A DNA stretch of 64,000 nt, taken from IMG/VR virus record IMGVR_UViG_3300036766_002181, positions 62,001 to 126,000 of that record; one strand, given 5' to 3'. Positions within the stretch are counted from its first letter, which is position 1, and each line of letters begins with the position of its first letter. The notes under the pieces are model-generated. The model was not told the origin of the DNA and did no database searches. It saw nothing but the letters and a program-made list of their open reading frames with translations. Below, piece by piece: positions 33,842 to 57,580 of this stretch. Both the position numbers and the translations under genes were made by a program.

Positions 33842-34600
33842 TTAACTCTTAGCGCCAGCTCTATTAATTTGGCAGAGAATTTCTTGTTTAACAAATTCTC
33901 TTATTAACCTATTTTTTGTTGCTCTTTGCCTTTGTTCCTCTTTAAGATCTTCCAATGGAATATCGGTTATTGTATTTCCCATAAGATCGATTATCTTAAA
34001 GTTGCCTCTCTTGTCTTTTAAGACATTTCTCTGGTGTATGTCGATTAACTCAACCCCAATCTTATTGAGATATTTGGCCGTATTATAACACATTACCAGC
34101 ATTGGAAGATCATTCCTGGAAAAAATATGATGATTGTCTTTTCTTACTCTATAAATCACATCCTTAAGATTTAATAAATGGCCCTCAAAAAAAGTTTGAT
34201 CAGAAACCCTTTCAAAAAAGGCAAACTCTTCCTTGGATAGGGGATATAGCCTTTCTTGAATAATGACATAAAGTTCCAACTCCCAGGTATCATGTTCGTC
34301 TCTTGGCTTGGGATTCTGTACAGTAATCCTTGGAAGTTTATAAACACCATAAATGTTTGATATGTGTTTAAGCTTCTTTCCTTTAAGTCTGGCACTGACT
34401 CTGGCTTCAGACCTGTCTGTTGTAAGCTTAACCACATGACCAGATTTTGTAAGATATGCCTCTCCAAAGGCTCCCTTGCCAAGTTGCTGCAAATCAAATT
34501 TAGAGGTCGGGGTTAGACCAAGTTTGTTTGCCAGACTTGGGTGATGCTCAATTAGGGCATCCTTAAAAAATGTTTCTTTTTCAAACGTGCTCATTGACAA
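33842..34600 (-). CDS. Ser/Thr protein kinase-like protein
   Basis: LGKGAFGEAY, VVKLT, IIQERL, DIHQRN catalytic loop, IIDL. Confidence 0.88.
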   Translation of the reverse strand: MSMSTFEKETFFKDALIEHHPSLANKLGLTPTSKFDLQQLGKGAFGEAYLTKSGHVVKLTTDRSEARVSARLKGKKLKHISNIYGVYKLPRITVQNPKPRDEHDTWELELYVIIQERLYPLSKEEFAFFERVSDQTFFEGHLLNLKDVIYRVRKDNHHIFSRNDLPMLVMCYNTAKYLNKIGVELIDIHQRNVLKDKRGNFKIIDLMGNTITDIPLEDLKEEQRQRATKNRLIREFVKQEILCQINRAGAKS

Positions 34601-36018: not shown

Positions 36019-36909
36019 TCAAAATAGGTTCTTTACAAAGTCAAGAACTCTTTCAAAGAAGCCGGCTTTCTTTTTCTTTTTTGATGGCAATGGCTTGCCC
36101 GATTCAGAGTCAACAGTTGTCCATACCTCTGATTGCAATCCCCAATCCTCATAGGGAAAATAGGTGTAACCATTATCGGCATATCTTTTGCCCCAAGAGT
36201 TTCTAACAATAAATCCTCCCTTGTCTTTTAGATACCCAACAATGCAAGTTGCATGGTAGCCGAGAAGAGCCTGCTTGTCATTTGCCTGTTTCCACATTCT
36301 TGGTCCATAGTTGTACACGGGAATTGTAAGCAGACAGGGACCATTTTTTACAAGAGCCTTCTTTAGGGCATCTATGCTCTTAACAACAGCATAACCCTGA
36401 ACCCTATATTCTGATGCCTCTTTTTTAAGGGCCTCTGTAATTGGTAGGGTTGTAAGATAGGGATAGTCTTTTTCTGGAACAGAGCCTACCTTTGTTAGGA
36501 TTCTCATCACATCTCTTGGATACATTCCCTCACCCTTTGTAGATCTACTATTATAGATAAACTGGGGGCTCATATAGTCCAAGAAATGAACATCCCTTCT
36601 TTCCTGCCATTCCTTCATTGCGGCAGAGGACATTCCAAAGCAACAACCTTGCTTTCCCTGATCTCTTATGGGAAGAAGCTCTGGTCTATAATCAAGATTG
36701 TCTGGAAGGTCATTTAGATTAATGGCCTGATAAATTGTTTCTGCCTCGTGATCTCTTGGATCGTGTGGACTCCTTTGTACTCTATCCAAACGAACATCCA
36801 GTGCCTCTGTTACCTTTCCACCAGAAGGAGGGGAAACAACAGTAGCAGGATAGATGGTCGTGATTGTTGATGATGGTGATGATTTTTTTGATTTTGATTT
36901 TTTGGCCAT
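36019..36909 (-). CDS. Papain-like (C1) cysteine peptidase
   Basis: LPDNLDYR, IRDQGKQGCC (Q, C), SPQFIY, YHATCIVGY (H), VRNSWG (N). Confidence 0.92.
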   Translation of the reverse strand: MAKKSKSKKSSPSSTITTIYPATVVSPPSGGKVTEALDVRLDRVQRSPHDPRDHEAETIYQAINLNDLPDNLDYRPELLPIRDQGKQGCCFGMSSAAMKEWQERRDVHFLDYMSPQFIYNSRSTKGEGMYPRDVMRILTKVGSVPEKDYPYLTTLPITEALKKEASEYRVQGYAVVKSIDALKKALVKNGPCLLTIPVYNYGPRMWKQANDKQALLGYHATCIVGYLKDKGGFIVRNSWGKRYADNGYTYFPYEDWGLQSEVWTTVDSESGKPLPSKKKKKAGFFERVLDFVKNLF

Positions 36910-40951: not shown

Positions 40952-42385
40952 TTATTTTCCTATTTTAAGCAAAAGTCTCTTTCCAAGTCTTTTTGCTCTT
41001 TCATCGATATCCTCGCCTGACTTATTCCATTCTTCTGGATCAAAGTCCTTATAATAGGCCTCAACTATATTTTCTACAGACATATAGGCGTTATAGGTAA
41101 GTTCTCCTACTGGAAGAACATTAAGAAGGGCCATAATGGTCTGTTGACTGAGAAGATCCTTTTCTTTTCCATTCTTTTCTATGCCGGCCAAAGAAAAGGC
41201 ATACTTCAGGGCAAGTCTATCTTTCTTAGAAAGAGCCATCTCTGCTTCAAGATTTGAAAGAAGTCTTAAACTCTTTTTTCTGTAGCCCTCTGGATTTCCG
41301 AGAAAGTTATCTGCATTATTGTCCTCTTCTGTGTCATCGTCGTCATCATTTTTCTTCATAAAAGGAAGAACCGTACCTTCTTGTTTCATGGTATGGGCAT
41401 CTGCCTTGTAGGGCATTTTAACAGCACCAGAAAATGTTGGATTCTTTGATTTCTTTACAATTCTATCATTGGCCTCAAAGGTTACCTGGGCAATGGCATA
41501 AATCTTTTCAAGAATCTTTGTTCTGATTTTCTTTGATAATGTTTTTATCATGGTTTGAAGTTTTGGTGCAATTCTATAATCTGGGCTTCGATTCATAAGA
41601 ACCTTATGGAGAGCCCAGTTGCTATCATAAATTTTCATAAATTCTTCCCTTGAGGGAAATCCTTTTCTTCCCTTTCCATGAAAAATAAAGGCATCAAGAA
41701 TTTCTTGCAATAAAACAACCTTTATTGCCTCCATTAATCTATCTGTAAGCTCTGCATTTCCAATAACAAGGGCCCGTCTTTCTGGATCCTCTATATATTG
41801 ATCCTCGCAGAAGATTGCATCCTTAAGAACCTTGTCGGTATCAAGATCCCTGTCTTCTTCTTCCTTGTCATCATCATTGGATTCTTTTTTAAGAGGCTCT
41901 TTTTCTTGATCTAGAATTTCTGGATTGTGGTAATGATCGGGCTCATATTCCTCTTTATCATCATAGGGATTATAACGTTTTTTCTTCTTTGCGCCGCCAT
42001 ATCCCCAGCCAAAATCATCGTCGCCATCATCTAAAGAGGTTCTTTTGTTATTAAAATGACCCGGATAACCCCTTGCTTCCTCTACCTCTGTTTTTTCCTT
42101 TGCATCCAAAGAAGTTTTTTTATTATCAAAATGATGATAGCCCCTTGTTGTCCTATCCTTTAATGAAGCATGAAGTTCAATTTCTTTTTGCAGGTCAAAG
42201 TTTGCCTTTAAAAGAGTTTCGTTGGCAAGCTCTACAACCCTATTGTGCGAAACCTCTGCTGCCGTAAAGATGTAGTCGTTAAGGTTTTCTAAATACTTTA
42301 TAAGATAGTTCTTTGCAAGCTCACGACTTTCTCTGGCAGCCTCTTGCATCCAGGGCTTCTGTCTTCTTGGAGGGCGATTGTTCAT
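40952..42385 (-). CDS. Hypothetical acidic/basic protein in the structural operon
   Basis: 477-aa ORF; internal duplicated RGY(P/H)..F.NK(K/R)TSLD. Confidence 0.65.
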   Translation of the reverse strand: MNNRPPRRQKPWMQEAARESRELAKNYLIKYLENLNDYIFTAAEVSHNRVVELANETLLKANFDLQKEIELHASLKDRTTRGYHHFDNKKTSLDAKEKTEVEEARGYPGHFNNKRTSLDDGDDDFGWGYGGAKKKKRYNPYDDKEEYEPDHYHNPEILDQEKEPLKKESNDDDKEEEDRDLDTDKVLKDAIFCEDQYIEDPERRALVIGNAELTDRLMEAIKVVLLQEILDAFIFHGKGRKGFPSREEFMKIYDSNWALHKVLMNRSPDYRIAPKLQTMIKTLSKKIRTKILEKIYAIAQVTFEANDRIVKKSKNPTFSGAVKMPYKADAHTMKQEGTVLPFMKKNDDDDDTEEDNNADNFLGNPEGYRKKSLRLLSNLEAEMALSKKDRLALKYAFSLAGIEKNGKEKDLLSQQTIMALLNVLPVGELTYNAYMSVENIVEAYYKDFDPEEWNKSGEDIDERAKRLGKRLLLKIGK

Positions 42386-43620
42386 TATGGCGCCTGTAGA
42401 TCTACGTCGGGCGGGCCATAGGAATCTGCTATGTCCTGCTGCATTTCATTCCAGGCATCAACTGCCTGTTCCTTGGTTACTTCATCTACAAATTCATTAC
42501 GATTAGAGCTATCAGGGGCTCCGTCATAACAGTTGCCACAACTAATTGTATATCCCCAATAGGATCCATCATAAAGCGTTGGCAAATCTCCACAATCATG
42601 GCATGGAAGAACACCTGGAAGATCCTTGCCTTCTACTTTTCCGCCAGCAAGATCTCTAGGGCCCTCTTCCAAAGCGGGTCTTCTTCCAAATTTATTTGAA
42701 CTTTTATGTCTTCTTTTTTGTTCGTCATAGTCAAAAATAGAACCCAGATCAAAATCATCCTCGCCACAATTTGGACACTTTATGTTTCTCTCATCATCTC
42801 CTATACCAAATCGAGAACCGCAACCATTGCAGCGTATGCGCACCTTTCTAACATCTTCCTTCAGACCTTCTTCTAAAACATCAATATCTGTGCCATGACA
42901 CTTCGGACAGGTAGGATTCATTGAATTTGTACTAAACTTTCTGCCGCATTCCATACATTCAACCCTTACTTTGTGATTATCTTTTCGGGGCTTCTCGGCA
43001 TGTTCGCCTACCGTACCAACAAGAGATCTTTTTGCCACGTTGTTCCTTTTTTCCGTATGCCATGGTTCATAGGCAGAGGGTATTTCCATCCAGGTTGATC
43101 CATCATGGGCACTTGCAAATACTTGGGCAATTTTCTTTTGGATTGGAAACTCATCCAAGACTTTTCTAACCTCTTTGCTATCCTTAACATAGAGATCAGA
43201 TTCAAAATGATGCATTGTCGCATCAATTCCTAAAAGCTCCTGATAAAGACTAGAATGTCCCATTTCTTCATTAACGGGGGCCGGTCTATAGAGGGGTTCT
43301 AATTTGTTTCTTAGCCATTCATAGGGATCGCCTGATCTTGCCTTCTGGATTTCATGGGGCATTTCATCACTATAATAATCAGTTAATACAGACACTAGCT
43401 CTTGAGAAAGGTTGTCTGTTTCTCCTTTAACAAAGGCTTCGAGTTCCTGATCCTCTACAGGATCAAGATCCAATCTTACCTCTTGCTTTTTTACGTAGGG
43501 CCGGAAGCCAAGTTTTTGTGCAACTTTCCTACCAAAAGAAGATTCTTTTAATACAATAGAAGAAACAATTTCTTTCAAATGCCTCTCTGTGAGTTTTGTC
43601 TTAATTGCCATGATTGCCAT
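42385..43620 (-). CDS. Multidomain zinc-ribbon protein with C-terminal Lar-like domain; putative internal head protein
   Basis: CMECG..CPKC, CNGCG..CPNC, and PCHDCG...ISCGNC...EQAVDAWNE; KLTE, LKE and LEE linkers. Confidence 0.65.
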   Translation of the reverse strand: MAIMAIKTKLTERHLKEIVSSIVLKESSFGRKVAQKLGFRPYVKKQEVRLDLDPVEDQELEAFVKGETDNLSQELVSVLTDYYSDEMPHEIQKARSGDPYEWLRNKLEPLYRPAPVNEEMGHSSLYQELLGIDATMHHFESDLYVKDSKEVRKVLDEFPIQKKIAQVFASAHDGSTWMEIPSAYEPWHTEKRNNVAKRSLVGTVGEHAEKPRKDNHKVRVECMECGRKFSTNSMNPTCPKCHGTDIDVLEEGLKEDVRKVRIRCNGCGSRFGIGDDERNIKCPNCGEDDFDLGSIFDYDEQKRRHKSSNKFGRRPALEEGPRDLAGGKVEGKDLPGVLPCHDCGDLPTLYDGSYWGYTISCGNCYDGAPDSSNRNEFVDEVTKEQAVDAWNEMQQDIADSYGPPDVDLQAP

Positions 43621-43645: not shown

Positions 43646-46624
43646 TTACACTTGGTTTGTAACCACAAAGTCAATGCTCACCGTTTCAAGCGTCTTGCTA
43701 GGCGTAATAAATATGGATCCTCTTATAATCCTGTTTTCTAAGTCTGCCTGAGTGGTCGTTGTTGTATCGATCTTAACCAAGAATCTTTCAACTCCCTTTT
43801 GATCCTGTATGGCCTTTAAAATTGGGGTTGTAAGCTGGGCAAATCTTGCAAGGGTTTCTTCACGACCCTGCTCAAAGAGCATTCTATAACCAACGGCCTT
43901 AACCTTGCGTCTAATGTCAATTAGAAGCCTTCGAACGTTAACTCTATCAAGAGAGCTTTCAGTTTGAAGAAGTGTCTTTTGTCCCCAAACCACAACTCCT
44001 TCTGAACCTGCAAAAGAAACAAGTGGATTAATGTTTGCATCCTGAAGAGTGTCCATGTTTTCTTTAGACAGTCTAACGGCTGCCGATTCTACTGTGTCTA
44101 GAGAGCCTCTGGTAAATCCAGCAGGAGCAAACCATGGATGGGCTACTGCATCATTCTTTGCAAAGGCACCAAGAACGGCGACTGAGGGTGGCACCACTCT
44201 GGTTCTTCCTGTAAAACTATCTCTAAGAACAACATCTGGGAAATAGGCAGCACCAAAAGAGCTGTTAATTCCACGGGCTGTATGTTGGTTGGAGGTGTTC
44301 TTAACGCTCAAAATCTGATTACTTGAAGAAATTGGCAAATTCTGAATATCATACTGTGGAACATCCATAATAAAGACAGAATCAAATCTGTTTTCATTAA
44401 CAAGAAGCGCCCTATCAGTGATTACTGTATGGCGAATTCCTGGAACTGCCATCATTTGAATGTCAATTTCTGTAACATCCTCAAAGATATCCAATGCCTT
44501 ATTAAAAGCAGCAACCGTTGGTCCGTCAGTAAGGCCACGATCTGCATAGGTCATTTCTTCTGTCACGGCCAAGTCTGTCATGTTGACGGCATCTCTGTCG
44601 AAAACATTTGTTCCATCAAATCCGCCATGCAAGAAGAAGGAGAACTTGGCAACATTGCGTGTTGCGGCATCAGTCAAATCATTTACAGAAAGGGCTCTAG
44701 TGTCGCTGTCCACTGTAACATTACCATCTCTTACATAAATCCACTCATCCATTTTTTGTGTATTTGGTTTATCAAAGGCATTAATTGCAATTTGTATATT
44801 TCCCAGGGAGAACTTATTATGATTAAATCTATCAGCATCAAGAATGCCATTCTCGGCAGAATCGGCAACTCCCTGGTTATTGCTTAAGACCATATTCATA
44901 AAGTCTGTATGGAAATTTGGATAATACTTGTTAAACGACAGGATGTTGGTATCCTGGGCCGTGCTTAGGTTTGGCTCTGCAACGCTGGTCTTTTCTTCAA
45001 ATTGAATGCCCCAATAAAGAGCCTTATCAACAACTCTATTTGGCGTTGAGCCTCTGGTAATTCTTTCTCTAAGAGGAACAGGCAATTGAACAATATTAAA
45101 GAAGGGATCAGAAACAGAAAGATAATCACCATCATCAAAACTGTTAAATGGAGCCGACCCAGAAGTTACAAGGTGTGGAACCCCACGGAAACCAAATGGA
45201 ACTGCGGCAGGAGAAAGTTCGCCATCAGAAACCTTGTTGGCCATTTCAACTCTCATATATCTTGAATTGTTTTCAAAATTGCCTTCGGTAATAAGCTTTT
45301 GTGAGCCAATTGCTGCATCAAAATTAAAGAAGGTTTTTGTATCTCCAACAATTCGAGCAACATATTGCGGAGAATCAGGATTTAGACTTAATCCTCTCCA
45401 TGCCTCAACTGCAACAGGAGCCTTGTCATTGTCGTTAAAATCTCTTACAAGGAGATCAAACTTGCCATAAGGCTCTGCATCTGTGCCTGGGATAATATTC
45501 TCAATTGAGAACTTAAGTCTAGAGTTTGGTTCCTTGCCATCTGAAAGGGCAGAAATCTTAAACAGATTTTCTTCCTGGCCACCAAATTTCTGTGAAACCA
45601 CATAAACAGATTCGGCAGTACGATATCTGTCTTCAAAATTTTCAAAACTTGGGATCGTGGTTGAGCCCGAGTTTCTAGTTGGCGAAGCTGACGTTAATAG
45701 GAAAACAACGTCTTCAGTTTCGAGTGCTCCCGAGACTGCGCCTACACCAAAATCCTCTAAAACAACACCTGAGCCTGTTGGCGTGGCTAGGGCTGGGTGA
45801 ATTTTATAATCAGCATATAGGAGGTGGCCTGCCTGCTCGACCTTATAAGGATCTGTATTAAGCACCTTGGTAAGATAGTTTGGTGCCGTTGGGTCAAAGG
45901 AGGCTGTAATAACATTTGGAAAGGCTGGATCAGGATTGCTGTGTCCATTTAGAAGCACAACAAATTCTTGACGCCCGTTGGCTATGTTTAGAGAGCCTGT
46001 AAGGCTCCCTGAAGCCGTTGAAGAAGTGCCTGTGGCATCTGGTGCATTGTCTGCCACTCTGCTGCTAGAGAGGGTTGCATACACTCCTGAAGCTGCAAAA
46101 ACAATACCACGAACAACCGGAACTCCTTCTATTGGTAGGCCAGCATCGGAAAAAATTGTTGAGGAACCTGTTTGCTTCATATAGCAACCAAGGACAAAGG
46201 TTCTGCCTTCATCTCCTTCGCCAGGAACGGTTACATATTGATTATCATCAAGACCACCACCAGGAGCCTGTGGAAGAACCGCACCGACAACAAAGCCGCC
46301 AAAAACAACACGGCCAGAGTTGTCACCAGCATCTTCTCTTGCCTTGCCTGAACCGGCACCAAGAACCCTAAGAAAGGTTAATGCCTGTGAATTTCTTAGC
46401 CATTCGATGGCTGCCATGGGAGCAGCAGCCTGATCATCTGTCGATGTACCAAAATCTACCACGAAGTCTGAATCCGTTGGAAGGGTTACAGGAACGAAGG
46501 CTGGTCCCTTTTGAGAAGTGCCTATAACTCCAGCCGGAATACCGGCAGGACGAATTGAAGTTGGACCAGTTCTATTGATTACCCTTGTCGTAACTCCTGC
46601 GCTCTTGTATGTTATTTGTGACAT
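43646..46624 (-). CDS. Tail sheath protein (copy 1)
   Basis: GVIGTSQKGPAFVP, LRVLG, GGFDG, AVPGI, YFPDV, PPSVA, PWFAPAG..RG, INP, WGQKTL, RVNVRRL. Confidence 0.95.
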   Translation of the reverse strand: MSQITYKSAGVTTRVINRTGPTSIRPAGIPAGVIGTSQKGPAFVPVTLPTDSDFVVDFGTSTDDQAAAPMAAIEWLRNSQALTFLRVLGAGSGKAREDAGDNSGRVVFGGFVVGAVLPQAPGGGLDDNQYVTVPGEGDEGRTFVLGCYMKQTGSSTIFSDAGLPIEGVPVVRGIVFAASGVYATLSSSRVADNAPDATGTSSTASGSLTGSLNIANGRQEFVVLLNGHSNPDPAFPNVITASFDPTAPNYLTKVLNTDPYKVEQAGHLLYADYKIHPALATPTGSGVVLEDFGVGAVSGALETEDVVFLLTSASPTRNSGSTTIPSFENFEDRYRTAESVYVVSQKFGGQEENLFKISALSDGKEPNSRLKFSIENIIPGTDAEPYGKFDLLVRDFNDNDKAPVAVEAWRGLSLNPDSPQYVARIVGDTKTFFNFDAAIGSQKLITEGNFENNSRYMRVEMANKVSDGELSPAAVPFGFRGVPHLVTSGSAPFNSFDDGDYLSVSDPFFNIVQLPVPLRERITRGSTPNRVVDKALYWGIQFEEKTSVAEPNLSTAQDTNILSFNKYYPNFHTDFMNMVLSNNQGVADSAENGILDADRFNHNKFSLGNIQIAINAFDKPNTQKMDEWIYVRDGNVTVDSDTRALSVNDLTDAATRNVAKFSFFLHGGFDGTNVFDRDAVNMTDLAVTEEMTYADRGLTDGPTVAAFNKALDIFEDVTEIDIQMMAVPGIRHTVITDRALLVNENRFDSVFIMDVPQYDIQNLPISSSNQILSVKNTSNQHTARGINSSFGAAYFPDVVLRDSFTGRTRVVPPSVAVLGAFAKNDAVAHPWFAPAGFTRGSLDTVESAAVRLSKENMDTLQDANINPLVSFAGSEGVVVWGQKTLLQTESSLDRVNVRRLLIDIRRKVKAVGYRMLFEQGREETLARFAQLTTPILKAIQDQKGVERFLVKIDTTTTTQADLENRIIRGSIFITPSKTLETVSIDFVVTNQV

Positions 46625-49829: not shown

Positions 49830-51035
49830 TTAAGGAGTTTTTAAAAACTCATCCAGGGTTTCTTGGTCTGAGGCATAAAACACCGTTTCTCCCTTTTTTT
49901 GGTTTGATTCTAAGATAGAAACTGTCTTTTTAATAAGCCTGCCTGTCCTTGGATCCAATATCTCTTTGTGAGAGGCATATCTCTGAAGAGTGGTAGAAGT
50001 TTGCCTTCCTTCTTCTGCCTGATCAATATCATTTAAAACATATTTGTCTTTATTTTCTAGGGCCTCATTTTTTTCAAGATGCGATTTTGGTATAATGTCA
50101 GCCGTTGGAAAAGTATCAAAAACCACGACAGGAGATAACACCTCTCTGCGAATTGGAACCATTCCTGTTTCTGGATTCGGGGCCAGAATAAAACCCTTAA
50201 TTGTTACCTCAAAGGTGTATCTCAAAATCCTGGAATCCTCAGAAAAGTCATCAAGATTATCAGAACCAGAAAAACTGTCCCCAACATAGGCCATAAACCA
50301 ATAACCCTTATCAGTGGTCAATTTATATCCCCTAACCTGCGGCAAGAATGAGCCAACAAGGGTTTCAATTAGATAATTCATGTGTTGGGTATAGCTGGTC
50401 CAAAAAACAACCTCATAGGTTGTTGTAAAGAATTGAGGTTGTGGAATTGTTATAATTTCCCACATATTGTTTCCTAGCCTTGGGCTTAAAAGACCACCAG
50501 AGGCAATCTCTGGATCTCTTCCTGCCTCGCCCTGATTGGCTCTCAGGGAGGATCTCCGTGAATTGTCCATATTCTTTAAGGCCAATTTATTGATAAAGTT
50601 TTGATAATCTAGATCCTGCTCCTTTGTAATTCTTCTTTTTATTCTTAATGTGCCAGTAAATTGGTTTATTCCTCGGCCATTAATATCCTCTGAAGTTTGG
50701 GTAAATGATTTTCGTCTAATTGATATGGCAGGAAGCATTATCTGCTTATTCCTATCTCTTGGCGGGCGAAGACGCTTGGCCACGGCAAAACGTTCCCCTG
50801 TGGCGAATATAACAAATGGCTTTTTTATGGCTATTTTCTTATTTGCCGAGGCAATATTTTTTGCTGAAAATCCTATGTCCTTGTCAAACAGATTAAAAAG
50901 AGCAACATCTGCATCTTCGATTCCGGCCGGTGCGATGGCAAAGTCTGTTACAGGAGAATCTCCCTCATATCCCGAATCTAGGTGTGGTTCTGGATTTCTG
51001 GGATCCCTCTCTATCGTCTGTCTGGTTGTGGCCAT
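49830..51035 (-). CDS. Tail completion / sheath stabiliser (T4 gp15-like)
   Basis: IEDADVALF, LPAISIRR, IPQPQFFTTTYEVVFWT..MN..IE; position next to the sheath. Confidence 0.75.
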   Translation of the reverse strand: MATTRQTIERDPRNPEPHLDSGYEGDSPVTDFAIAPAGIEDADVALFNLFDKDIGFSAKNIASANKKIAIKKPFVIFATGERFAVAKRLRPPRDRNKQIMLPAISIRRKSFTQTSEDINGRGINQFTGTLRIKRRITKEQDLDYQNFINKLALKNMDNSRRSSLRANQGEAGRDPEIASGGLLSPRLGNNMWEIITIPQPQFFTTTYEVVFWTSYTQHMNYLIETLVGSFLPQVRGYKLTTDKGYWFMAYVGDSFSGSDNLDDFSEDSRILRYTFEVTIKGFILAPNPETGMVPIRREVLSPVVVFDTFPTADIIPKSHLEKNEALENKDKYVLNDIDQAEEGRQTSTTLQRYASHKEILDPRTGRLIKKTVSILESNQKKGETVFYASDQETLDEFLKTP

Positions 51036-51054: not shown

Positions 51055-52818
51055 TTAACCGTTATAGTGTAATTGATAAACTTCACGAGAAAGACCATAA
51101 TCAAGCAAAACAACCCTGCCGTCTGCTGTCTTGCCCCAGTGTTCTATGGTCCTTAGATCTCCATTGAGCAGTCCTGTGTCTTCCATGAGATACAAAATAC
51201 TTTGAAAGAATTTATTGTGAATTCTACGAGGATGTTTGGCGAACTCTTCTCTGCCGCCTAGCCTATCTGGAAACTTTGTTACATAAAACAAATCTGCAAC
51301 ATCCTGCTCAAAATCCAGTCCTGTTAATTTTTGGAATTCATTATAATCTGTTATTGGTCTAACAATTTCAGAAACTAACCACTGAAACTTTGGATCATAA
51401 TCGTAAATCTTGGCAACAACCGGCTTTGTTTTGGGATTGGTAAAAACATCTACTTCTGTTTCGTTTTGGGCCAGGCCTCTTGCTCCCTTTGCCCACTTTA
51501 AAACGCTTTTATTATCAACAAGATAAACTCTTCTGGCACTTCCACTGTTAAGAAAGGTTCCGTGTCTTTTAAGATAAAGTTCTTGTACCTCTTCTTTTGA
51601 GAAATGCACAGCATCTCCTGCCGACTGTAAATTTTTAAACCTTTGCAAATCAAGAAATTTCTTTTCCAAAAGAAAAGAACCATAGGCTTCTCTTAGGCCT
51701 TTTGGAAGCCGGGCAGATTCTTCTACTGTCTGTTTACCATTGTTATTTATTCTCCGTCTTAGCTCTTCGTTGCCACCTTCAACGGCAATGCCATAATCCA
51801 ATACAACCAATCTTCCATCTGCCGTTTTACCCCAATGTCCGATATAGGTAAGTTCCGAAGCGTATATACCAACATCTGTAATGAAACTAACAATCTTTTT
51901 TAAAAAAGAATTGTCTTTATATCTGTTGAGCACGCGGCCGAGGCTCTCTTGTTGCCAACAGACGGCATTAAATTCTTCAAAAGGAATTCCTGTTAAAATT
52001 TCAAAGTCCCGGTCGCTTGTTAATTCTTTTACCAACTCAGAAACAAGCCATCTAGGACGTTCAAAGTTTGTATCATAATCAAAAATCCTCGTTACAAGAT
52101 CTTTTGTTTTTGGATTTGTAAACACGTCTAGCTCGGCCTGGTTTTGTCTTAATCCAAACTTGTTATAGGCAAACTTTAAAACCTTGTTGTTTGAAAGCAT
52201 ATAGGTTTCCCTTGAAGAGCCCTGACCAAGATATGCCTCTTTTGGAACTCTATGTGCCAAATAGTATTGTTGATCCTCCCAATTTATTATTTTCTTAAAC
52301 TCATTAAAATCAAAGAATTTTTTCCCTTCATTTATAACAACGGGAAAATAAACCTCTCTTAGTGAGAGCACCTCTTGCTGTGTCACCGTCGCAATTGGCT
52401 CATTAAAACCTTTTGTGTTATAATGATATGGCGCAAGCTGTTGCCCTGTAAGAACATGGGCAAAGTCATTATTTTTGTCTCTATTTGGTTCGTCTCCTGA
52501 ATAAAGATTTGGTGTAGACATAAGCTTACTATAGGCAGCATAGACAGCCTTGTGAAGCTTCTCGCTGGTCAGGGATTGGGTTGTATAGGTTGCCATGCTC
52601 CCAAGCTCTTCCATGACGCCCAGACGAAGCTCGTTCATAACAACCTTTCTAAGATCCAAGCCAAGTCTTTTTGCTATATTCTCTACAAACTCTTCTGTTA
52701 TCGTTTTTGGATTAAGGGGGCGGATTCCTGGATTTGCCAGTCCCATGCCAAGATCATCTCGATTGGTAGCCTGCATGTCTTGCTCTAAATAGATCAATAG
52801 TTGGCCCAAATTATTCAT
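51055..52818 (-). CDS. Tandem double atypical protein-kinase-like protein
   Basis: Two copies of L.(Q/S)GS.R..Y..VLK.A..QN..E..VFTNPKTK..WLVSE..HWGKTADGR.V.LDYG; start probably MNNLGQ at 52818. Confidence 0.8.
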   Translation of the reverse strand: MNNLGQLLIYLEQDMQATNRDDLGMGLANPGIRPLNPKTITEEFVENIAKRLGLDLRKVVMNELRLGVMEELGSMATYTTQSLTSEKLHKAVYAAYSKLMSTPNLYSGDEPNRDKNNDFAHVLTGQQLAPYHYNTKGFNEPIATVTQQEVLSLREVYFPVVINEGKKFFDFNEFKKIINWEDQQYYLAHRVPKEAYLGQGSSRETYMLSNNKVLKFAYNKFGLRQNQAELDVFTNPKTKDLVTRIFDYDTNFERPRWLVSELVKELTSDRDFEILTGIPFEEFNAVCWQQESLGRVLNRYKDNSFLKKIVSFITDVGIYASELTYIGHWGKTADGRLVVLDYGIAVEGGNEELRRRINNNGKQTVEESARLPKGLREAYGSFLLEKKFLDLQRFKNLQSAGDAVHFSKEEVQELYLKRHGTFLNSGSARRVYLVDNKSVLKWAKGARGLAQNETEVDVFTNPKTKPVVAKIYDYDPKFQWLVSEIVRPITDYNEFQKLTGLDFEQDVADLFYVTKFPDRLGGREEFAKHPRRIHNKFFQSILYLMEDTGLLNGDLRTIEHWGKTADGRVVLLDYGLSREVYQLHYNG

Positions 52819-53524
52819 TATAGAATCCATTATTGCCCTGTTCCTCAAAGGCTTCATCCTTTGGATTTCCAAGATCATCCTTCTTTTCTGTGTCTATTTT
52901 TCTTGGGCCATCTCCAAGGGCAATCTCGGCCATATCATTGCCAAGGTGCTCTCGAATCTCTCTCTTGTCTGCCGTAGGCCCCTCTTCGGTTTCTGGGAGG
53001 CCCCTCTGTTGAACAAACTTATTTTGAACCTGGCTATCATTAAAGTTTTTGCTTTTAAACAAAAGCTCCTTAAATGTCTCTATATCAAACTGACCGACTC
53101 TTGATAGCTTGCCGGTTACCTTAACCGCCTTATCATATTCGACCTGGCCATAGATGTTGTCTACGTCTATTGCATTCAATATTTCATAAACCTCTTCACC
53201 ATAAACAAAGAAGTCACCAGAGGTAACAGAAATATCTTTATCAACCAAGTCTCTTGTTTGAATATAAAGCTCAATTGAAGTATCTCCTTCCATGCCAAAG
53301 GCATTCCACTTGGCAGATCTCGTTGGCTGGCCGGCAAGAACATCAAGCTTTATTGGGTTCTCAAAAATCTTTTCAATTGCCTCCTCATAAACCTCATGAA
53401 CCCTTGTCTGAAGCATAGAGATGGGAAAATAAACAATGTATTGGCCAATTACATCTTTTACTAACTCCCTGTTAATATCAGATATAAAATTTTGTTCTTT
53501 AGAACCTATGAATAATCTTGCCAT
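52811..53524 (-). CDS. Neck/head-closure protein (T4 gp14-like)
   Basis: INRELVKDVIGQ..VYFPI, YEEAIEK.F..P, GDFFVYG..VYEI, YGQ; position between gp13-like and gp15-like genes. Confidence 0.8.
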   Translation of the reverse strand: MARLFIGSKEQNFISDINRELVKDVIGQYIVYFPISMLQTRVHEVYEEAIEKIFENPIKLDVLAGQPTRSAKWNAFGMEGDTSIELYIQTRDLVDKDISVTSGDFFVYGEEVYEILNAIDVDNIYGQVEYDKAVKVTGKLSRVGQFDIETFKELLFKSKNFNDSQVQNKFVQQRGLPETEEGPTADKREIREHLGNDMAEIALGDGPRKIDTEKKDDLGNPKDEAFEEQGNNGFYNE

Positions 53525-53559: not shown

Positions 53560-54645
53560 TTAAAACAAAACCCAGCCTCGATATTTGCCATGTTTCTTTT
53601 TGCCACGTATAAGCTGGCGCAAATTGTGTCTCTCAAGACTGTGTTTCTGACAAATCTCAACTATTGAGTAGCCTTCTACCACTTCTCCCAGCGGAGACAA
53701 AAGTCTTGTCAGAGAGCGGGCTTCAATAGTGTTTAAACAATTGCTTTGATTCCATTCCTCATTATTATAATTTTTATATCGAGTCCAGCCTTTATAAAAC
53801 CACAGACTTTCTCTCGTTATGTCCCTAACCTTTGTTTCAGACAGATTATTTTCATTGGCAAAATCTTGAAGATTTGTTATATTTTTGTAAAGAATACCAC
53901 CTGGCGAAAGAAGATTTGCATTTTGAAAACCTTTGAAATTTCTTGTGTCCTTTCCAACAAAATCAAGTTCTTTTAGAATTGGCCTTGAACAAACCAGCTT
54001 ATGCTTTTCTTTTATATTCTCCAATAATGCCTGTCGGCGCTTTTCTATAGCCTCTTTTGAATGAGTCTTTTCATGCCTATCAGGATCTTCTTGCCACATT
54101 TTTTTGAGCATTTCAGATGTGGCTTGTTTTCTTTTTTCATTGCCTTTCCATTGTTCCTTTCGAATTTCTGAAAGATTTTTTCTATGTTCCTCTGTTTGCG
54201 CAAGTCTATTATTTTCCATCATTTTCTTTCGAATTTCTGGGTTTGCCCAATTGGCAAGAGCAACTGCCGATATTTTTTTGCTTGTTTCTTCAGGTGTTTT
54301 TGAATAACAAGAACGGCCTTCTCCTTTTGATTGTTTTTTGAAGTTATAGCACAGGGCTTGTTTGTCATAATATTTTTCAATATATGATTCCTCAATCAAA
54401 AGCCTATCTTCTTGTGGTCCTTCTACTGTCTCCAAAATATGAAATTCAAATGCCTCTTCTCCGCATTTGTTAAAATCATTCTGAAGAAACTTGTTGTGGT
54501 GGGTTCCCTTTCTTAGGGATTTTAAATGGGCATTGCCACGAGATTTAAACTCTTTTGCAGAACCAACATAAATGCGACCATTTATTATATTAACGATTTT
54601 ATAAACTCCTGACTTAAGAGAATTTCCTTCATATAAAAATTTCAT
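53560..54645 (-). mobile_element. Free-standing GIY-YIG homing endonuclease between the two neck genes
   Basis: SGVYKIVNIINGRIYVGSA, HHNKFLQNDFNK; duplicated C-terminal LLSP.G...GW DNA-binding module. Confidence 0.9.
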
Positions 54646-54721: not shown

Positions 54722-55990
54722 CTATGCAATCGTCAATGTAACATTTGGTGGCATCGGCACCATCAAAAGTTTCTTCATGTTGTTTTCTGCCAACGTTGCC
54801 TCCAGCTCTGCCAACTTGGCAAAGGTTAGGCTATCCAACTTTGCCGTGAGTCCTGTATCTCCTACCAACAGCCTCTCCTTGTCTTCTTTTGCCTGTGTAA
54901 GCAAGGACTCTGCATTCAGCTTAAGTTCTGCTCCACCAATTGGTATTGTATCTATTTTTCCTCTTACTCTTCCCAGAATCTCTGTACAAAGAGCAAAGGT
55001 GTATTGAAAGATCCAGTTCTTGGCCCAAGGGTTTAGACTTGAATAATTGATAAGACCAAAGGGAATATTGGCAGGGCTGTTAACCCCAAACATGGTATCA
55101 TCTGGAATGTTAATTCCGCCCATACCTCCAATGCTACCAGAAACGCCCATTGCATTTGCAAGGATCTCTGATGTGGGTGATGCAGGAAAGCCAACTCTAA
55201 TCCAGACCCTATTGTTTATTCTTTCTACGGCCGGCCTTGGAATAGGAAAAATACGAATATCCCTACCTGATATTCTATATCGATAATGAGATCTCCTAAC
55301 CCTTTGAGCCTCCTTTAACATACTTGCTCTAAGAACGTCCTCGAAGATCGGCAAGATATAAAATCTTGTATCTGGTATATAACTTTCTACAGGAAGGCCC
55401 GAGGCAATAAAGTTTGAAGCCAGGTTGCTGTTAAAAACATATTGAATTGGGGCGAAGTGAAACACCTCCAAGATTTTCATGACGCCTCTACTACCAGAAG
55501 GCATCTGACTGGCAATTGGCACTCCAGCCCCATCTACAAGATCTGTATATAAATCATAGTCCTGCTTGCCATCTATGAGAGTAATAGAGCCTGAAACCGA
55601 ACCCCTGCTTTGACCATAGCCAATTTCTGCCGAATAGGGTTCAACCTGACGAAGCAGGAATTCTAAATTTGGCTTAATATAATTGTTGGTTAGGTTTATT
55701 GATAGATTGGCCGTATTGGGATCATTTGGATCTACAGAGCCTGTTTGGGTTCCCAGAAGGCTTGTTAGGTTTGACTTGGCCTGATATTCAACTATGTTTG
55801 CATTGAATGTAAAGGTTGCCTCTTCAAAGCAACACCATATCATCTTCTTTGTTAGTTCAACGTTCAATACATCTTCTCCATGCTTCCTTAAGATATAGAA
55901 CACAATCTTGTCTGCGTCTTTTTGAAATACCGGGTCTTTATCAAAAAAACCGAAAGAAGTGGGCTTGATTGTCGAATTAAAGGAAGACAT
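54722..55990 (-). CDS. Neck/head-tail adaptor protein (T4 gp13-like)
   Basis: LRKHGEDVLNVELT, FEEA, QDYDL, WIFQY..AL..EILG.VRGK...IP; start MSSFNS at 55990. Confidence 0.85.
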   Translation of the reverse strand: MSSFNSTIKPTSFGFFDKDPVFQKDADKIVFYILRKHGEDVLNVELTKKMIWCCFEEATFTFNANIVEYQAKSNLTSLLGTQTGSVDPNDPNTANLSINLTNNYIKPNLEFLLRQVEPYSAEIGYGQSRGSVSGSITLIDGKQDYDLYTDLVDGAGVPIASQMPSGSRGVMKILEVFHFAPIQYVFNSNLASNFIASGLPVESYIPDTRFYILPIFEDVLRASMLKEAQRVRRSHYRYRISGRDIRIFPIPRPAVERINNRVWIRVGFPASPTSEILANAMGVSGSIGGMGGINIPDDTMFGVNSPANIPFGLINYSSLNPWAKNWIFQYTFALCTEILGRVRGKIDTIPIGGAELKLNAESLLTQAKEDKERLLVGDTGLTAKLDSLTFAKLAELEATLAENNMKKLLMVPMPPNVTLTIA

Positions 55991-57580
55991 ATGAATTTCT
56001 CTATAATAAATAGAAACACGACGAGGATAACCTATGAAGAGGCGAGAAAAAGATTCGAAGAATACCATCCAGATATTATTCTGCTTGAAAATGGGTATAT
56101 GGGCTGGAGGAAGCCTGCTTGTTTCTTTGATAGAATTATAAATAAACCATTTTCAGGGTGCAGGCCAAAGGATGTACTTCGTTTTAAATCGGTGCATCCT
56201 GATAGACGCAAAGAAAAACAAAAAAAATCATATAGAAAAACTTTAGAAAAACGACCAAAAAAAGAAATAAAACCAAAAAGAACATGGAAAGAAGTGGTCG
56301 AAAGTAGAAAAAAAACAATGAAACAAAAATATGGATTTGAGAATCCCTCTCAAATAAAAGAATTTCAAGAAAAGAAAAAGATAACAAGTCTAAAAAATTG
56401 GGGTGTTATATCTCCGTTGTCTCTTGGATCGGAAATTCGTAAAACAATTGTTAAAACAAATATTAATAAATACGGTGGCAAATCTCCAAGCCATTCAATT
56501 GAAGTTCGCAAAAAAATGAAAGAAACAAATTTAAGAAAATATGGAGTAGAATATTATTCTCAAAGCAAAAAACGCAATTTTGATACGTCAAAAAAAATAT
56601 TATTAAATGATGGGATCACGCTATTAACAATTAAAGAATTTTTTAAAAAATATATTGTTAAGCCGTGGCCAACAAAGGCTACAAATGTACACTGGTTTCC
56701 TGGCCAGGAAATTATCAACGAATCGAATATGATGGAAAAAATAAAAGTTTATCAAAGTCACAAAACAGGATTAGAACATCTGTTTCAAAATCTTTCTGGT
56801 CTATCTCACTTTAATAAAAAGCCAAAAAAAATCAAAAGACTTTTTCGACCAGACTTTTGTTTAAATGATAATGTTTTTGTTAATGTGGATGGACTTTATT
56901 GGCACAGCGAAAAATACCATAATAAACACAGTCACAAAGAAGTAAGAGAATCTTTTGAAGAGGCCCAATTAAGAATTTTGCAGTTTAGAGAAAACGAAGT
57001 ACGACATAATTTTCCAATTGTTTGGTCGATTTGCCAAAATTCTATAGGAAACACAAAAGATAAAATTTTTGCTAGAAAATGCTATATAGAAAAAATTTCT
57101 CAAAAAGAAGCCAATAGTTTTTTACTTAAAAATCATTTAAAGGGAAGCAAAAATGCAAAACATTTTGGTTTAAAAACAAAAGATAATAATGTTTTGGTAT
57201 CTGTTATGTCTTATAAAATCATAAAAAACATTTGTAAAATTGAACGCTTTTGTTCTGTAATAAATACAAATATAGTTGGTGGATTTGGCAAGCTTCTAAA
57301 AATAATAGAAACCAATCTACCGAAAGAATGTACGGCTATTCATTATTGGGTTGATTTAAGATATGGTATAGGAAAATTTTTAACAAACTTTAATTTTATT
57401 CATAAACGAGATACAATTGGGTGGGAATGGACCGATGGATATAGTTGCTTTAACCGTCTTAGGTGTGTCGCCGAAAAGGAATATTCTGAAAAAGAAAATG
57501 CTAAAAGAAAAGGAATCTTTCGTATTTATGATTCAGGACAACGATTATGGGAAAAGAAACTTATCGATGAATCAGAATAA
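55991..57580 (+). mobile_element. Hef-like endonuclease: KYG repeats, Vsr/PD-(D/E)xK-like core, C-terminal GNAT-like module
   Basis: KYGFENPSQ / KYGGKSPS / KYGVEYYSQ repeats; RPDF...VDGLYWHS; FL.KNHLKG...IERFC...GGFGKL...RIYDSG; AGGA SD before the ATG at 55991. Confidence 0.75.

What the first reader, a model, noticed from the sequence alone, without database searches (positions are those of the whole stretch)
51055..52818. Tandem atypical kinase pair inserted between the neck and tail-completion genes; first copy may be a pseudokinase
Two strongly similar kinase-like domains share VFTNPKTK and HWGKTADGR.V.LDYG. Where the catalytic loop usually reads D-x4/5-N, domain 2 has GDLRTIEH and domain 1 has SELTYIGH. 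So Asn is replaced by His in both, and the catalytic Asp by Glu in domain 1. The Gly loop is GSSR/GSAR. This family is distinct from the kinases at 33.8-36 kb, so the window encodes four kinase domains of two types, all in late regions. Possible roles are virion protein phosphorylation, small-molecule kinase activity, or an active/regulatory pair.
Basis: partly seen in the sequence, partly recalled or inferred. Interest (0 to 1): 0.68.

Follow-up and report, generated by a model that had tools for sequence, protein, structure and literature searches.

The report
Tandem mini-kinase gene in phage neck module
A huge sediment phage carries, between its neck and tail-completion genes, one gene encoding two copies of a very small, uncharacterised, virus-only kinase-like domain. 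The family is large and evolves fast, so it looks like phage accessory enzyme machinery rather than a structural part.

Summary
ORF 51055-52818/52878 (-) encodes three parts: a DUF5661-like helical N-module, a disordered linker, and two roughly 190-aa domains that are 39% identical (E 4e-42).

Each domain is a protein-kinase-like (PKL) fold cut short about 12 residues after a DYG motif that stands in for DFG. The AF2 model has pLDDT 91, and all top PDB neighbours are kinases, with Z up to 8.

The domains belong to an uncharacterised, apparently virus-restricted family:
- It matches PHROG 4301 and no Pfam family.
- It has about 4,300 clusters at 50% identity.
- Motif scans found 0 hits in 596 Gb of cellular genomes.

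Across 245 family domains, K, the QN..E motif and the DYG Asp are invariant. The kinase Asn position is His (80%), Ser, Asn or Gln. The catalytic Asp is Glu in only 2% of domains, and window domain 1 is one of them.

Domain 1 keeps every other ATP-site residue, so "pseudokinase" is possible but not shown.

The gene is not a private insertion. Arrays of 1-4 such units, fused or separate, sit between the gp14-like and gp15-like genes in at least 13-19 related huge-phage contigs. They diverge about twice as fast as their flanks.

Best reading: these are active, late-expressed accessory phosphotransferases in a cargo hot spot. The substrate is unknown and could be protein or RNA.

The parts
51055..52878 (-). 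ORF of 607 aa (longest reading), kept as P0001. The likely true start is Met17 (52830) or Met21 (52818), giving 591 or 587 aa. The stop codon is at 51055-51057.
52504..52707 (-). N-terminal helical module, aa about 58-125. It is DUF5661-like (PF18905) but below the sequence threshold. It is 47% identical to the same module in the closest relative, L021.
   Evidence: Pfam E 0.094. Own-genome PF18905 scan gave 17.4 bits, E 0.0013. The Atlas structure match has TM 0.67 over 83 residues. AF2 pLDDT is 85-96. Identity to L021.
52321..52488 (-). Predicted disordered linker, aa about 131-186.
   Evidence: AF2 full-length model, pLDDT 25-55
51778..52323 (-). Mini-kinase-like domain 1, aa 186-367. Key residues: G-loop GQGSSR (218-223), Lys235, Q245/N246/Glu249, catalytic loop S-E342-LTYIG-H348, DYG 361-363. 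Glu stands in place of the catalytic Asp.
51058..51663 (-). Mini-kinase-like domain 2, aa 406-607. Key residues: G-loop NSGSAR (444-449), Lys461, Q471/N472/Glu475, catalytic loop G-D574-LRTIE-H580, DYG 593-595. The protein ends 12 residues after DYG.
52811..53524 (-). Context: upstream 237-aa gene, gp14-like (neck) by position. It is 50-70% identical to the syntenic gene in relatives. Its stop overlaps the Met21 start of the kinase-like gene.
   Evidence: The match to T4 gp14 is only E 0.027, so the assignment rests on synteny.
49830..51035 (-). Context: downstream 401-aa gene, gp15-like (tail completion / sheath stabiliser). It starts 19 nt after the kinase-like stop.
   Evidence: Pfam T4-gp15_tss E 0.028. 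hhalign to T4 gp15 E 0.012 over the same region. Synteny.

Best explanation
Shown.
- The gene encodes a beads-on-a-string protein: a DUF5661-like helical module, a disordered linker of about 55 aa, and two units of about 190 aa from an uncharacterised, apparently virus-restricted family of minimal protein-kinase-like (PKL) domains.
- Each unit has an N-terminal helical extension, a GxGSSR glycine loop, the beta3 Lys, an alphaC helix carrying an invariant Q-N-x-x-E, a hinge Trp, a G-D-x5-H-W-G-K-T catalytic loop and a DYG metal-binding motif. It then stops. There is no activation segment and no alphaF-alphaI.
- Domain 2 carries the full catalytic set. Domain 1 carries Glu for the catalytic Asp but keeps everything else.
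- The gene is one member of a rapidly diverging array of 1-4 units, fused or separate, at the gp14/gp15 junction of a clade of huge phages with T4-like neck genes. That gp13-to-gp15 interval also collects homing endonucleases, NUDIX genes and small ORFs.

Inferred.
- Both units bind ATP with a metal. Domain 2 is an active phosphotransferase. Domain 1 is a weakened or specialised copy, not a dead scaffold.
- The protein is made late together with the virion proteins and could be packaged.
- It acts on host or phage macromolecules in an accessory, arms-race role (host takeover or counter-defence). Different units would supply different substrate surfaces.
For: Fold.
- The AF2 domain-2 model has pLDDT 90.8 and pTM 0.86.
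- Foldseek against the PDB gives top hits that are almost all protein or atypical kinases, probability about 1.0, E down to 1e-4.
- VIA-align Z reaches 8.0: CDK2 Z 8.0, MPS1 Z 7.9, PRPK/Bud32 Z 7.8 over 140 residues.
- The unbiased search of 48,161 chains returns only PKL folds or the related SAICAR-synthetase fold in its top 50.

Motifs.
- K461, Q471, E475 and the D and G of DYG are invariant, and N472 is in 245 of 246 domains with a residue in that column. D574 is in 239 of 245.
- The profile aligns the catalytic loop through DYG onto PAK4 HRD..DFG, and the G-loop/VLK region onto SteC.

Family.
- PHROG 4301, E 3e-29.
- 4,344 representative clusters at E<=1e-3.
- Atlas neighbour clusters are 87-100% viral.
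- The motif pattern gives 0 hits in 596 Gb of prokaryotic genomes but 38 stretches in IMG/VR.

Locus.
- The array lies between the gp14-like and gp15-like genes in L005/L006, L007, L009, L014, L021 and 13 (+6 truncated) of 59 IMG/VR loci, with 1-4 units each.

Rapid divergence.
- Flanking proteins are 55-74% identical, while the kinase units are 33-40% identical.

Operon packing.
- The Met21 start overlaps the gp14-like stop, and there are 19 nt to the gp15-like start. No promoter or terminator excess was found.

Module arrangement.
- The full-length model shows independent modules, pTM 0.45.

Precedent.
- Phage PKL kinases act as broad counter-defence enzymes: T7K, PMC13645617.
Against: - There is no experimental or expression evidence. 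The only run holding the DNA is one sediment DNA library.
- Structural Z-scores of 7-8 are middling by the tool's own calibration.
- All sequence links to named kinase families are below threshold.
- The unit lacks all protein-substrate-binding subdomains and has no conserved Lys two residues after the catalytic Asp. A protein substrate is therefore not implied.
- The closest small solved neighbours act on RNA or as ATPases: ArkI, Bud32, RIO.
- Long-term retention at a structural-gene junction, and a third paralogue next to a baseplate gene, could instead mean a role in virion assembly.
- Fast divergence alone cannot separate positive selection from relaxed constraint.
Confidence: 0.55

Rival explanations
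1. The units are not protein kinases. They would be minimal PKL enzymes acting on RNA, nucleotides or small molecules, or ATPase switches, in the manner of ArkI (tRNA 2'-kinase), Bud32/PRPK, RIO kinases or aminoglycoside kinases.
For: - In the unbiased structure search the small atypical enzymes rank at the top: TkArkI Z 7.6, Ark1 Z 7.0, Rio2 Z 7.3, Rio1 Z 6.9, APH(2'') Z 7.3, Bud32 Z 5.9-6.3. PRPK reaches Z 7.8 over 140 residues.
- The domain ends 12 residues after DYG, so subdomains VIII-XI are absent. ArkI also lacks VIII and X and has a non-canonical catalytic loop (PMC9095486).
- There is no conserved Lys at Asp+2.
- One relative, P0081, fuses the domain to a region with a ligase-like K-x-D-G motif.
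- JGI named one relative Bud32.
Against: - ArkI's defining motifs (HGQ, DFE, C-terminal YKR) are absent. The Bud32 model scores 13.5 bits against a cut-off of 125.
- The RNA_ligase hit in P0081 is only E 0.046.
- Domain units are not generally basic: median pI 6.3, domain 1 pI 5.4.
- Z-scores to ordinary protein kinases are just as high.
Confidence: 0.25
2. The array serves virion morphogenesis. It would phosphorylate neck, tail or baseplate proteins, or act as an ATP-driven assembly factor at the head-tail joining step.
For: - The position between the gp14-like and gp15-like genes is conserved across lineages whose flanks have diverged to 47-74% identity.
- The gene is tightly packed in the late operon.
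- The third paralogue in this genome lies directly upstream of a PF12322 T4_baseplate gene.
- In L048 and L060 a family member lies within a few kb of a sheath-like gene and a baseplate gene.
Against: - About half of the family's loci (32 of 59) have no neck or tail gene within 8 kb. Others sit in replication or nucleotide-metabolism modules.
- More distant phages have an uninterrupted gp13-gp14-gp15 run (L025, L026, L031, L077), so the neck does not need the array.
- Copy number varies from 1 to 4, one copy is split (L009), and divergence is twice that of the structural neighbours. This is unlike an assembly component.
- The same interval also holds GIY-YIG and NUDIX cargo.
Confidence: 0.13
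3. The pair is an active/regulatory heterodimer. Domain 1 would be a true pseudokinase that binds and controls domain 2.
For: - Glu replaces the catalytic Asp in domain 1 only. Gly-to-Ser before it and Ile-Ala after DYG are also unique in the 71-row alignment.
- Domain 1 has the longer terminal branch, 1.39 against 0.97.
Against: - All other ATP-site residues are kept.
- Glu occurs in stand-alone members P0165 and P0207.
- The full-length model gives no fixed inter-domain arrangement, pTM 0.45.
- In relatives the units are often separate genes.
Confidence: 0.07

Closest known systems
Phage T7 protein kinase gp0.7 (T7K) and relatives such as JSS1_004 (PF27024 Phage_T7_kinase)
   Same: Both are phage-only, compact PKL enzymes with a divergent DFG-like motif and no classical regulation. 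T7K is a known counter-defence and host-takeover enzyme (PMC13645617). T7-like kinases are structural neighbours in BFVD, E about 1e-5 and TM 0.44-0.50. One Atlas feature-neighbour cluster carries PF27024 in 11% of its members.
   Different: No detectable sequence relation: hhalign probability 0.4%, E 0.16. The motif is DYG, not DPV. The unit here stops right after the motif and has no shut-off or DNA-binding C-domain. It lies in a late structural operon rather than an early one, and it forms tandem arrays.
Kinase-PolyVal (PF18762), the minimal kinase domain of phage and conjugative-element polyvalent proteins
   Same: Both are very short (about 160-190 aa) PKL domains of mobile elements. It gives the best, though sub-threshold, Pfam hit, on the G-loop/VLK region.
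   Different: The score is 18.4 bits against a cut-off of 27, and only 1 of 71 family members reaches E<0.1. The protein here is not embedded in a giant polyvalent protein.
Bud32/PRPK and RIO atypical kinases
   Same: Similar size, with no activation loop or substrate-binding lobe. The catalytic loop is G-D-L-like without Lys at +2. Best coverage in structure alignment is 140 residues for PRPK (Z 7.8) and 144 for Rio1 (Z 6.9).
   Different: Those are cellular, universally conserved and act in ribonucleoprotein complexes. They have Asn in the catalytic loop and helices after DFG. The NCBIfam Bud32 model scores far below its cut-off.
ArkI archaeal tRNA 2'-kinase (PDB 7vnx, 8yv5)
   Same: A roughly 200-aa PKL enzyme lacking subdomains VIII and X, with a non-canonical catalytic loop. 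Z 7.0-7.6 (PMC9095486).
   Different: ArkI has HGQ, DFE and a basic YKR helix. The family here has GD..H and DYG, no C-terminal basic helix, and a median pI of 6.3.
PHROG 4301 (unknown function)
   Same: This is the family itself: E 3e-29 for the whole protein, with both domains matching.
   Different: The PHROG carries no functional annotation. The tandem fusion and the neck-locus arrays are not described in any library or paper I could search.

Membership tests
Protein-kinase-like (PKL) superfamily | Bilobal fold: a five-stranded N-lobe with alphaC, plus a helical C-lobe core carrying the catalytic and metal-binding loops | tested here: met
   AF2 pLDDT 90.8. Foldseek PDB probability about 1.0 with almost all top hits kinases. 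VIA Z up to 8.0. The unbiased wide search returns only PKL or SAICAR-synthetase folds in its top 50. Z of 7-8 is middling on the tool's scale.
Protein-kinase-like (PKL) superfamily | Gly-rich loop, beta3 Lys and alphaC Glu | tested here: met
   GxGSSR, with the second Gly and the Arg in 244 of 244 domains that have a residue there. Lys and Glu are in 246 of 246. Both window domains have them.
Protein-kinase-like (PKL) superfamily | Catalytic-loop Asp (the HRD Asp) | tested here: inconclusive
   Domain 2 has Asp574. Domain 1 has Glu342. The family has Asp 239, Glu 5, Gly 1.
Protein-kinase-like (PKL) superfamily | Catalytic-loop Asn (metal ligand) | tested here: not met
   Both window domains have His. 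The family has His 195, Ser 24, Asn 14, Gln 12. The position is one residue further from the Asp than in PKA, by my own comparison with textbook PKA numbering.
Protein-kinase-like (PKL) superfamily | DFG Asp | tested here: met
   DYG; the Asp and the Gly are each in 245 of 245 domains that have a residue there.
Eukaryotic-type protein kinases (Pkinase PF00069) | Activation segment/APE and alphaF-alphaI (subdomains VIII-XI), and a Pfam score over the gathering threshold | tested here: not met
   The domain ends 12-14 residues after DYG. There is no PF00069 hit.
Kinase-PolyVal PF18762 | Score at or above the 27-bit gathering threshold | tested here: not met
   18.4 bits. 10.1 bits in the own-genome scan. 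Only 1 of 71 members reaches E<0.1.
T7 kinase family | Sequence homology to T7 gp0.7, and the DPV motif | tested here: not met
   hhalign E 0.16, probability 0.4%. The motif is DYG.
Bud32 (TIGR03724) / RIO | Model score over cut-off, and KEOPS or ribosome-assembly context | tested here: not met
   13.5 bits against a cut-off of 125, in relative P0074. The context is a phage structural operon.
ArkI RNA kinase | HGQ catalytic triplet, DFE metal loop and YKR helix (PMC9095486) | tested here: not met
   The motifs are absent from the family consensus. Only fold similarity is seen, Z 7.0-7.6.
PHROG 4301 | Significant profile match | tested here: met
   E 3.2e-29 for the whole protein, 1.2e-11 for domain 1 and 3.8e-17 for domain 2.
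Pseudokinase (domain 1) | Loss of catalytic residues together with loss of phosphotransfer | not testable with these tools
   Only Asp-to-Glu is seen, with every other site kept. Activity must be measured.
DUF5661 PF18905 (N-module) | Score at or above the 27-bit gathering threshold | tested here: not met
   13.5-17.4 bits. The Atlas structure match is TM 0.67 by the target. Relatives P0076 and P0079 carry a bona fide DUF5661 upstream of the same module.

The most novel reading that the evidence does not exclude
This would be a virus-exclusive class of mini-kinases. They are truncated right after the DFG-equivalent and use His, Ser or Gln in place of the metal-binding Asn. Huge phages would deploy them as fast-diversifying arrays of 1-4 units, co-expressed with the neck and tail and possibly packaged and injected. 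Each unit would hit a different host target, making a modular, virion-delivered phosphorylation weapon against host defences. Asp-to-Glu units such as domain 1 would be specialised or regulatory members.
Probability: 0.15. Interest if true: 0.8.

Novelty: new variant of a known kind. Interest (0 to 1): 0.55.

Why it matters
Phage-encoded kinases have recently been shown to disarm bacterial defences broadly (T7K, PMC13645617). Only a few phage kinase families have been studied.

This family is large, with about 4,300 clusters at 50% identity. It is apparently absent from cellular genomes and has no annotation in Pfam or PHROGs. It also represents an extreme minimisation of the kinase fold, with an unusual catalytic loop.

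Its recurrence as variable tandem arrays inside the neck-tail operon of phages with contigs up to about 460 kb offers two things:
- A natural series of 1-4 units, Asp/Glu variants and His/Ser/Asn/Gln variants for dissecting what a minimal kinase needs.
- A testable candidate for late or virion-delivered host manipulation.

If the substrate proves to be RNA or a small molecule, the family would extend the short list of PKL enzymes that do not act on proteins.

Tried and rejected
- **Complex prediction** (domain 1 + domain 2 + ATP + Mg): score 0.00, no verdict. This is not evidence either way.
- **PDB sequence search** with the single protein: no hit. With the profile, only E 0.17-0.8.
- **Pfam on all 71 family members**: no family recurs.
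- **NCBIfam**: only noise-level kinase hits.
- **T7 gp0.7 homology**: rejected.
- **Relation to the window's other kinase-like ORF at 33.8 kb**: only the G-loop aligns, probability 12%.
- **Orthology of window domains 1 and 2 to the two separate genes of the closest relative L021**: unresolved, because all pairs are 35-40% identical. The tree places both window domains with the "last-unit" group, but only at SH-aLRT 90 and in an open fork.
- **P0081 ligase-like fusion**: RNA_ligase motif at only E 0.046. P0082, P0083 and P0084 partner regions have no family.
- **Basic-charge test for RNA binding**: no signal.
- **RNA or expression data**: none. One sediment DNA run holds the locus.
- **Literature**: no paper mentions DUF5661. 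The jumbo-phage comparative review does not describe this family.
- **T4 gp14 comparison**: too weak to name the 237-aa gene on sequence alone, E 0.027.
Full report
**1. What is in the sequence**

The minus strand carries an ORF at 51055..52878 of 607 aa, kept as P0001. That ATG overlaps the stop codon of the upstream 237-aa gene (ATGAATAA) and is the start used by the public gene call P0072, 587 aa. Relatives with the same N-terminal module begin at an equivalent point, so Met17 or Met21 is the probable start.

The two halves of the protein align over 197 residues at 39% identity, E 4e-42.

**2. Architecture**

A full-length AF2 model has mean pLDDT 77 and pTM 0.45. It shows four parts:
- A confident helical N-module, aa about 60-125.
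- A disordered stretch, aa about 131-186.
- Two confidently folded domains (pLDDT about 90) with the same order of secondary-structure elements.
- A partly helical linker of lower confidence between the two domains.

The low pTM means no fixed arrangement of the modules is predicted.

The N-module is DUF5661-like. The sequence hit is below threshold at 13.5-17.4 bits. The ESM-Atlas structure search matches a DUF5661 cluster, TM 0.67 by the target over 83 residues. Relatives P0076 and P0079 carry a bona fide DUF5661 just upstream of the same module. No paper in the library mentions DUF5661.

**3. The repeated unit is a minimal protein-kinase-like domain**

*Fold.* Domain 2, folded with a 71-row alignment, gives pLDDT 90.8 and pTM 0.86.
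- Foldseek against the PDB returns almost only protein kinases and atypical kinases at probability about 1.0. These include PknB, PRPK/Bud32, WbdD, AceK, POMK and APH(2''). TM-scores are only 0.31-0.43.
- VIA-align re-scoring gives Z up to 8.0, with PRPK aligned over 140 residues at Z 7.8.
- An independent search of 48,161 representative chains puts only PKL folds, or the related SAICAR-synthetase fold, in the top 50. Top scores are ULK4 7.8, TkArkI 7.6, Rio2 7.3, APH(2'') 7.3, Ark1 7.0 and Rio1 6.9.
- These Z-values are middling by the tool's own calibration, so the fold call also rests on the motifs below.

*Motifs.* The family profile aligns its G-loop/VLK stretch to the SteC kinase, and its catalytic loop through DYG onto PAK4 HRD...DFG (E 0.17-0.8).
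- In that alignment Asp574 falls on the HRD Asp.
- His580 falls on the PAK4 residue at the canonical Asn position.
- Asp593 falls on the DFG Asp.
- In the model His580 directly precedes the strand 181-183 (model numbering), which I equate with kinase beta7.

*Truncation.* The unit ends 12-14 residues after DYG, as do stand-alone family members of about 203-207 aa. It therefore has no activation segment, no APE motif and no alphaF-alphaI helices.

**4. The family**

PHROG 4301 (unknown function) matches at E 3e-29. Pfam offers only sub-threshold Kinase-PolyVal (18.4 bits against 27) and ABC1 hits. No Pfam family recurs across the 71 members.

A word-index search found 70 single-domain relatives, none with a Pfam domain, many of them on contigs of 200-460 kb. 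An exhaustive profile search of 1.84 billion representatives found:
- 4,344 clusters at E<=1e-3.
- 2,825 clusters at E<=1e-10.
- 1,200 clusters at E<=1e-30.
- Up to four units per protein.

Atlas neighbour clusters are 87-100% viral. BFVD neighbours are uncharacterised proteins of large myoviruses (RaK2, CBB and others), followed by annotated phage kinases.

Two degenerate DNA patterns for the W-G-K-T..D-G-R..D-Y-G signature gave no hit in 596 Gb of prokaryotic species representatives. One of them gave 38 stretches in IMG/VR. The family therefore appears to be virus-restricted.

It shows no detectable sequence relation to T7 gp0.7 (hhalign E 0.16). Its relation to the window's other kinase-like ORFs at 33842-34600 and 34608-36008 is limited to the G-loop, probability 12%. 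Those two ORFs match phrog_18305 "kinase" weakly.

**5. Conservation of the catalytic residues**

I aligned 251 domain hits from 214 proteins to the family profile. Fractions below are over the hits with a residue in each column; 4-7 partial hits are gapped per column.

| Position | Residues found |
|---|---|
| beta3 Lys | 246 of 246 |
| alphaC Q-N-x-x-E | Q 246 of 246, N 245 of 246, E 246 of 246 |
| G-loop second Gly and Arg | 244 of 244 |
| DYG Asp and Gly | 245 of 245 |
| Catalytic-loop Asp | Asp 239, Glu 5, Gly 1 |
| Asn position | His 195, Ser 24, Asn 14, Gln 12 |

It is a family trait, and the canonical Asn still occurs in some members, for example the middle units of P0073, P0074 and P0078.

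Window domain 1 is one of only five Glu variants.
- In the 71-row alignment it is the sole exception at that column. It is also unique at the preceding Gly (Ser) and at the two residues after DYG.
- It retains every other ATP-site residue.
- Glu also occurs in members with one complete unit: P0165, and P0207, whose second hit is only a 66-residue fragment.
- I therefore regard domain 1 as a conservative catalytic variant of unknown activity, not a demonstrated pseudokinase.

Domain 2 has its own oddity: Asn at the first G-loop Gly, where 229 of 244 residue-bearing family domains have Gly (7 further rows are gapped).

**6. Genomic setting**

The window is part of a 244.7-kb IMG/VR record, estimated 57% complete, from a sediment metagenome.

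On the minus strand the gene order is:
1. gp13-like (phrog_211 head-tail adaptor; homologues carry PF26809).
2. GIY-YIG endonuclease.
3. The 237-aa gene.
4. The kinase-like gene.
5. The 401-aa gene.
6. The 1016-aa sheath.
7. A 992-aa sheath paralogue.

The 401-aa protein matches T4 gp15 weakly in the same region by two methods, Pfam E 0.028 and hhalign E 0.012. The 237-aa protein is gp14-like by position only.

*The same junction in other phages.* It holds family members in independent assemblies:

| Assembly | Content at the gp14/gp15 junction |
|---|---|
| L005/L006 | One 638-aa protein with three fused units |
| L007 | 750 aa: N-module plus three units |
| L009 | Three separate genes, the third split into 94 + 138 aa |
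| L014 | 308-aa family member, directly preceded by a 266-aa gene that I did not test individually |
| L021 / P0076 contig (closest relative) | 430-aa DUF5661+module+one unit, followed by a separate 227-aa unit |

*Survey of 59 IMG/VR loci*:
- 13 have 1-4 units between the gp14-like and gp15-like genes.
- 6 more are adjacent on truncated contigs.
- 6 have the neck module nearby with the family member outside the gp14-gp15 junction. In L025, L026, L031 and L077 (more distant phages, 35-43% flank identity) gp13-gp14-gp15 run uninterrupted.
- 2 sit next to a sheath-like or baseplate gene.
- 32 have no neck or tail gene within 8 kb.

Elsewhere, family members sit among replication and nucleotide-metabolism genes or small ORFs.

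The array is therefore an old insertion that characterises a sub-clade, not a private acquisition. The gp13-to-gp15 interval is also a general cargo site, holding GIY-YIG here and in L021 and NUDIX in L007.

A third family copy in the same genome (203 aa, G000:C1 about 222.5-223.1 kb) lies directly upstream of a PF12322 T4_baseplate gene.

**7. Evolutionary tempo**

| Comparison | Flanking structural proteins | Kinase-like protein or units | N-module |
|---|---|---|---|
| Window vs L005, L007, L009 | 49-66% | about 33% | - |
| Window vs L021 | 66-74% | 35-40% | 47% |

A maximum-likelihood tree of 95 units places both window domains with the last-unit group (P0075/76, P0079, P0073_d3, P0074_d3) at SH-aLRT 90, but in an unresolved fork. 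Domain 1 has the longer terminal branch, 1.39 against 0.97.

The picture is an invariant catalytic core with fast-changing remainder, variable copy number, and repeated fusion, fission and decay. This fits an accessory, conflict-related enzyme better than a structural or assembly component. Relaxed constraint cannot be excluded without codon-level analysis.

**8. Mechanism**

*Shown:* a PKL fold, a complete ATP/metal-site signature in domain 2, a single Asp-to-Glu change in domain 1, tight packing in the late neck-tail operon, and a family-wide virus restriction.

*Inferred:*
- Both units bind nucleotide.
- Domain 2 transfers phosphate.
- The product is made late and may be virion-associated.
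- The target is a host or phage macromolecule.

The known precedent is T7K, which disarms defence systems by promiscuous phosphorylation (PMC13645617).

The main rival is a non-protein substrate or an ATPase role. The unit lacks all protein-substrate-binding subdomains, and its nearest small solved neighbours are ArkI (tRNA 2'-kinase, PMC9095486), Bud32/PRPK and RIO. Against this rival, ArkI's defining motifs are absent and the units are not basic, with a median pI of 6.3.

A morphogenetic role and a strict active/pseudokinase pair are less likely, for the reasons listed under the rival explanations.

The complex prediction for domain 1 with domain 2 returned no verdict and is not used as evidence.

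**9. Verdict**

It is too strong on "pseudokinase" and incomplete on context.

This is a new, uncharacterised variant of the kinase-like fold. It belongs to a large virus-only family that recurs as variable arrays in the neck module of huge phages. The substrate is unknown.

No alternative genetic code was used.

Noticed in passing
G000:C1 about 222495-223106 (-), which is L003:1495-2106 (-); outside the window: A third, stand-alone 203-aa copy of the same mini-kinase family, with Ser at the Asn position. It lies directly upstream of a PF12322 T4_baseplate gene (E 1e-18) and next to an Amidase_2 gene on the other strand.
   Followed up: partly
window 53560-54645 (-): A GIY-YIG homing-endonuclease-like ORF (PF01541, E 4.7e-8) lies between the gp13-like and gp14-like genes. 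A GIY-YIG gene sits at the same junction in the closest relative (P0076 contig). L007 has a 613-aa NUDIX gene there instead. The gp13-gp15 interval is therefore a cargo hot spot.
   Followed up: partly
window 55922-57580 (+): A 552-aa DUF7487 (PF24308, E 6e-16) ORF on the opposite strand, in a low-GC patch (31.6% at 56-58 kb). It overlaps the 5' end of the gp13-like ORF as listed. A 526-aa DUF7487 gene lies in the same place in the relative contig.
   Followed up: no
window 33842-34600 (-) and 34608-36008 (-), with 36019-36909 (-): Two adjacent ORFs of a different kinase-like type. They have GxGxxG, VxKLT, D-x-H-x-x-N and IIDL motifs, match phrog_18305 'kinase' at E 1e-3 and 9e-5, and give weak Pkinase and Kinase-PolyVal hits. 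They are followed by a papain-family Peptidase_C1 gene (E 9e-18).
   Followed up: partly
window 43646-46624 (-): A second, 992-aa tail-sheath paralogue sits directly downstream of the 1016-aa sheath gene. The equivalent paralogue in L005 is about 30% identical to the window sheath. The pair is conserved in all related contigs (L005, L007, L009, L014).
   Followed up: no
window 42385-43620 (-): A 411-aa ORF with HypA-like zinc-ribbon (E 3e-11) and Lar restriction-alleviation-like (E 2e-6) matches, inside the tail gene block.
   Followed up: no
L009:7820-8104 and 8113-8529: The third kinase-like unit of a related phage's array is split into two ORFs, an N-lobe of 94 aa and the remaining 138 aa. 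This looks like decay or a frameshift within the array.
   Followed up: no
L014:907-3396: In a 320-kb relative, genes with Thg1, ADP-ribosylglycohydrolase and faint Arr (rifampin ADP-ribosyltransferase-like) matches lie just upstream of gp13. This is a further sign of conflict-type cargo around the neck module.
   Followed up: no
P0081 (693 aa), P0082 and P0084: Family units occur fused to other regions. P0081 has a C-terminal part with a ligase-like K-x-D-G motif (RNA_ligase E 0.046). P0082 and P0084 have unrelated N-terminal regions that match no family.
   Followed up: partly
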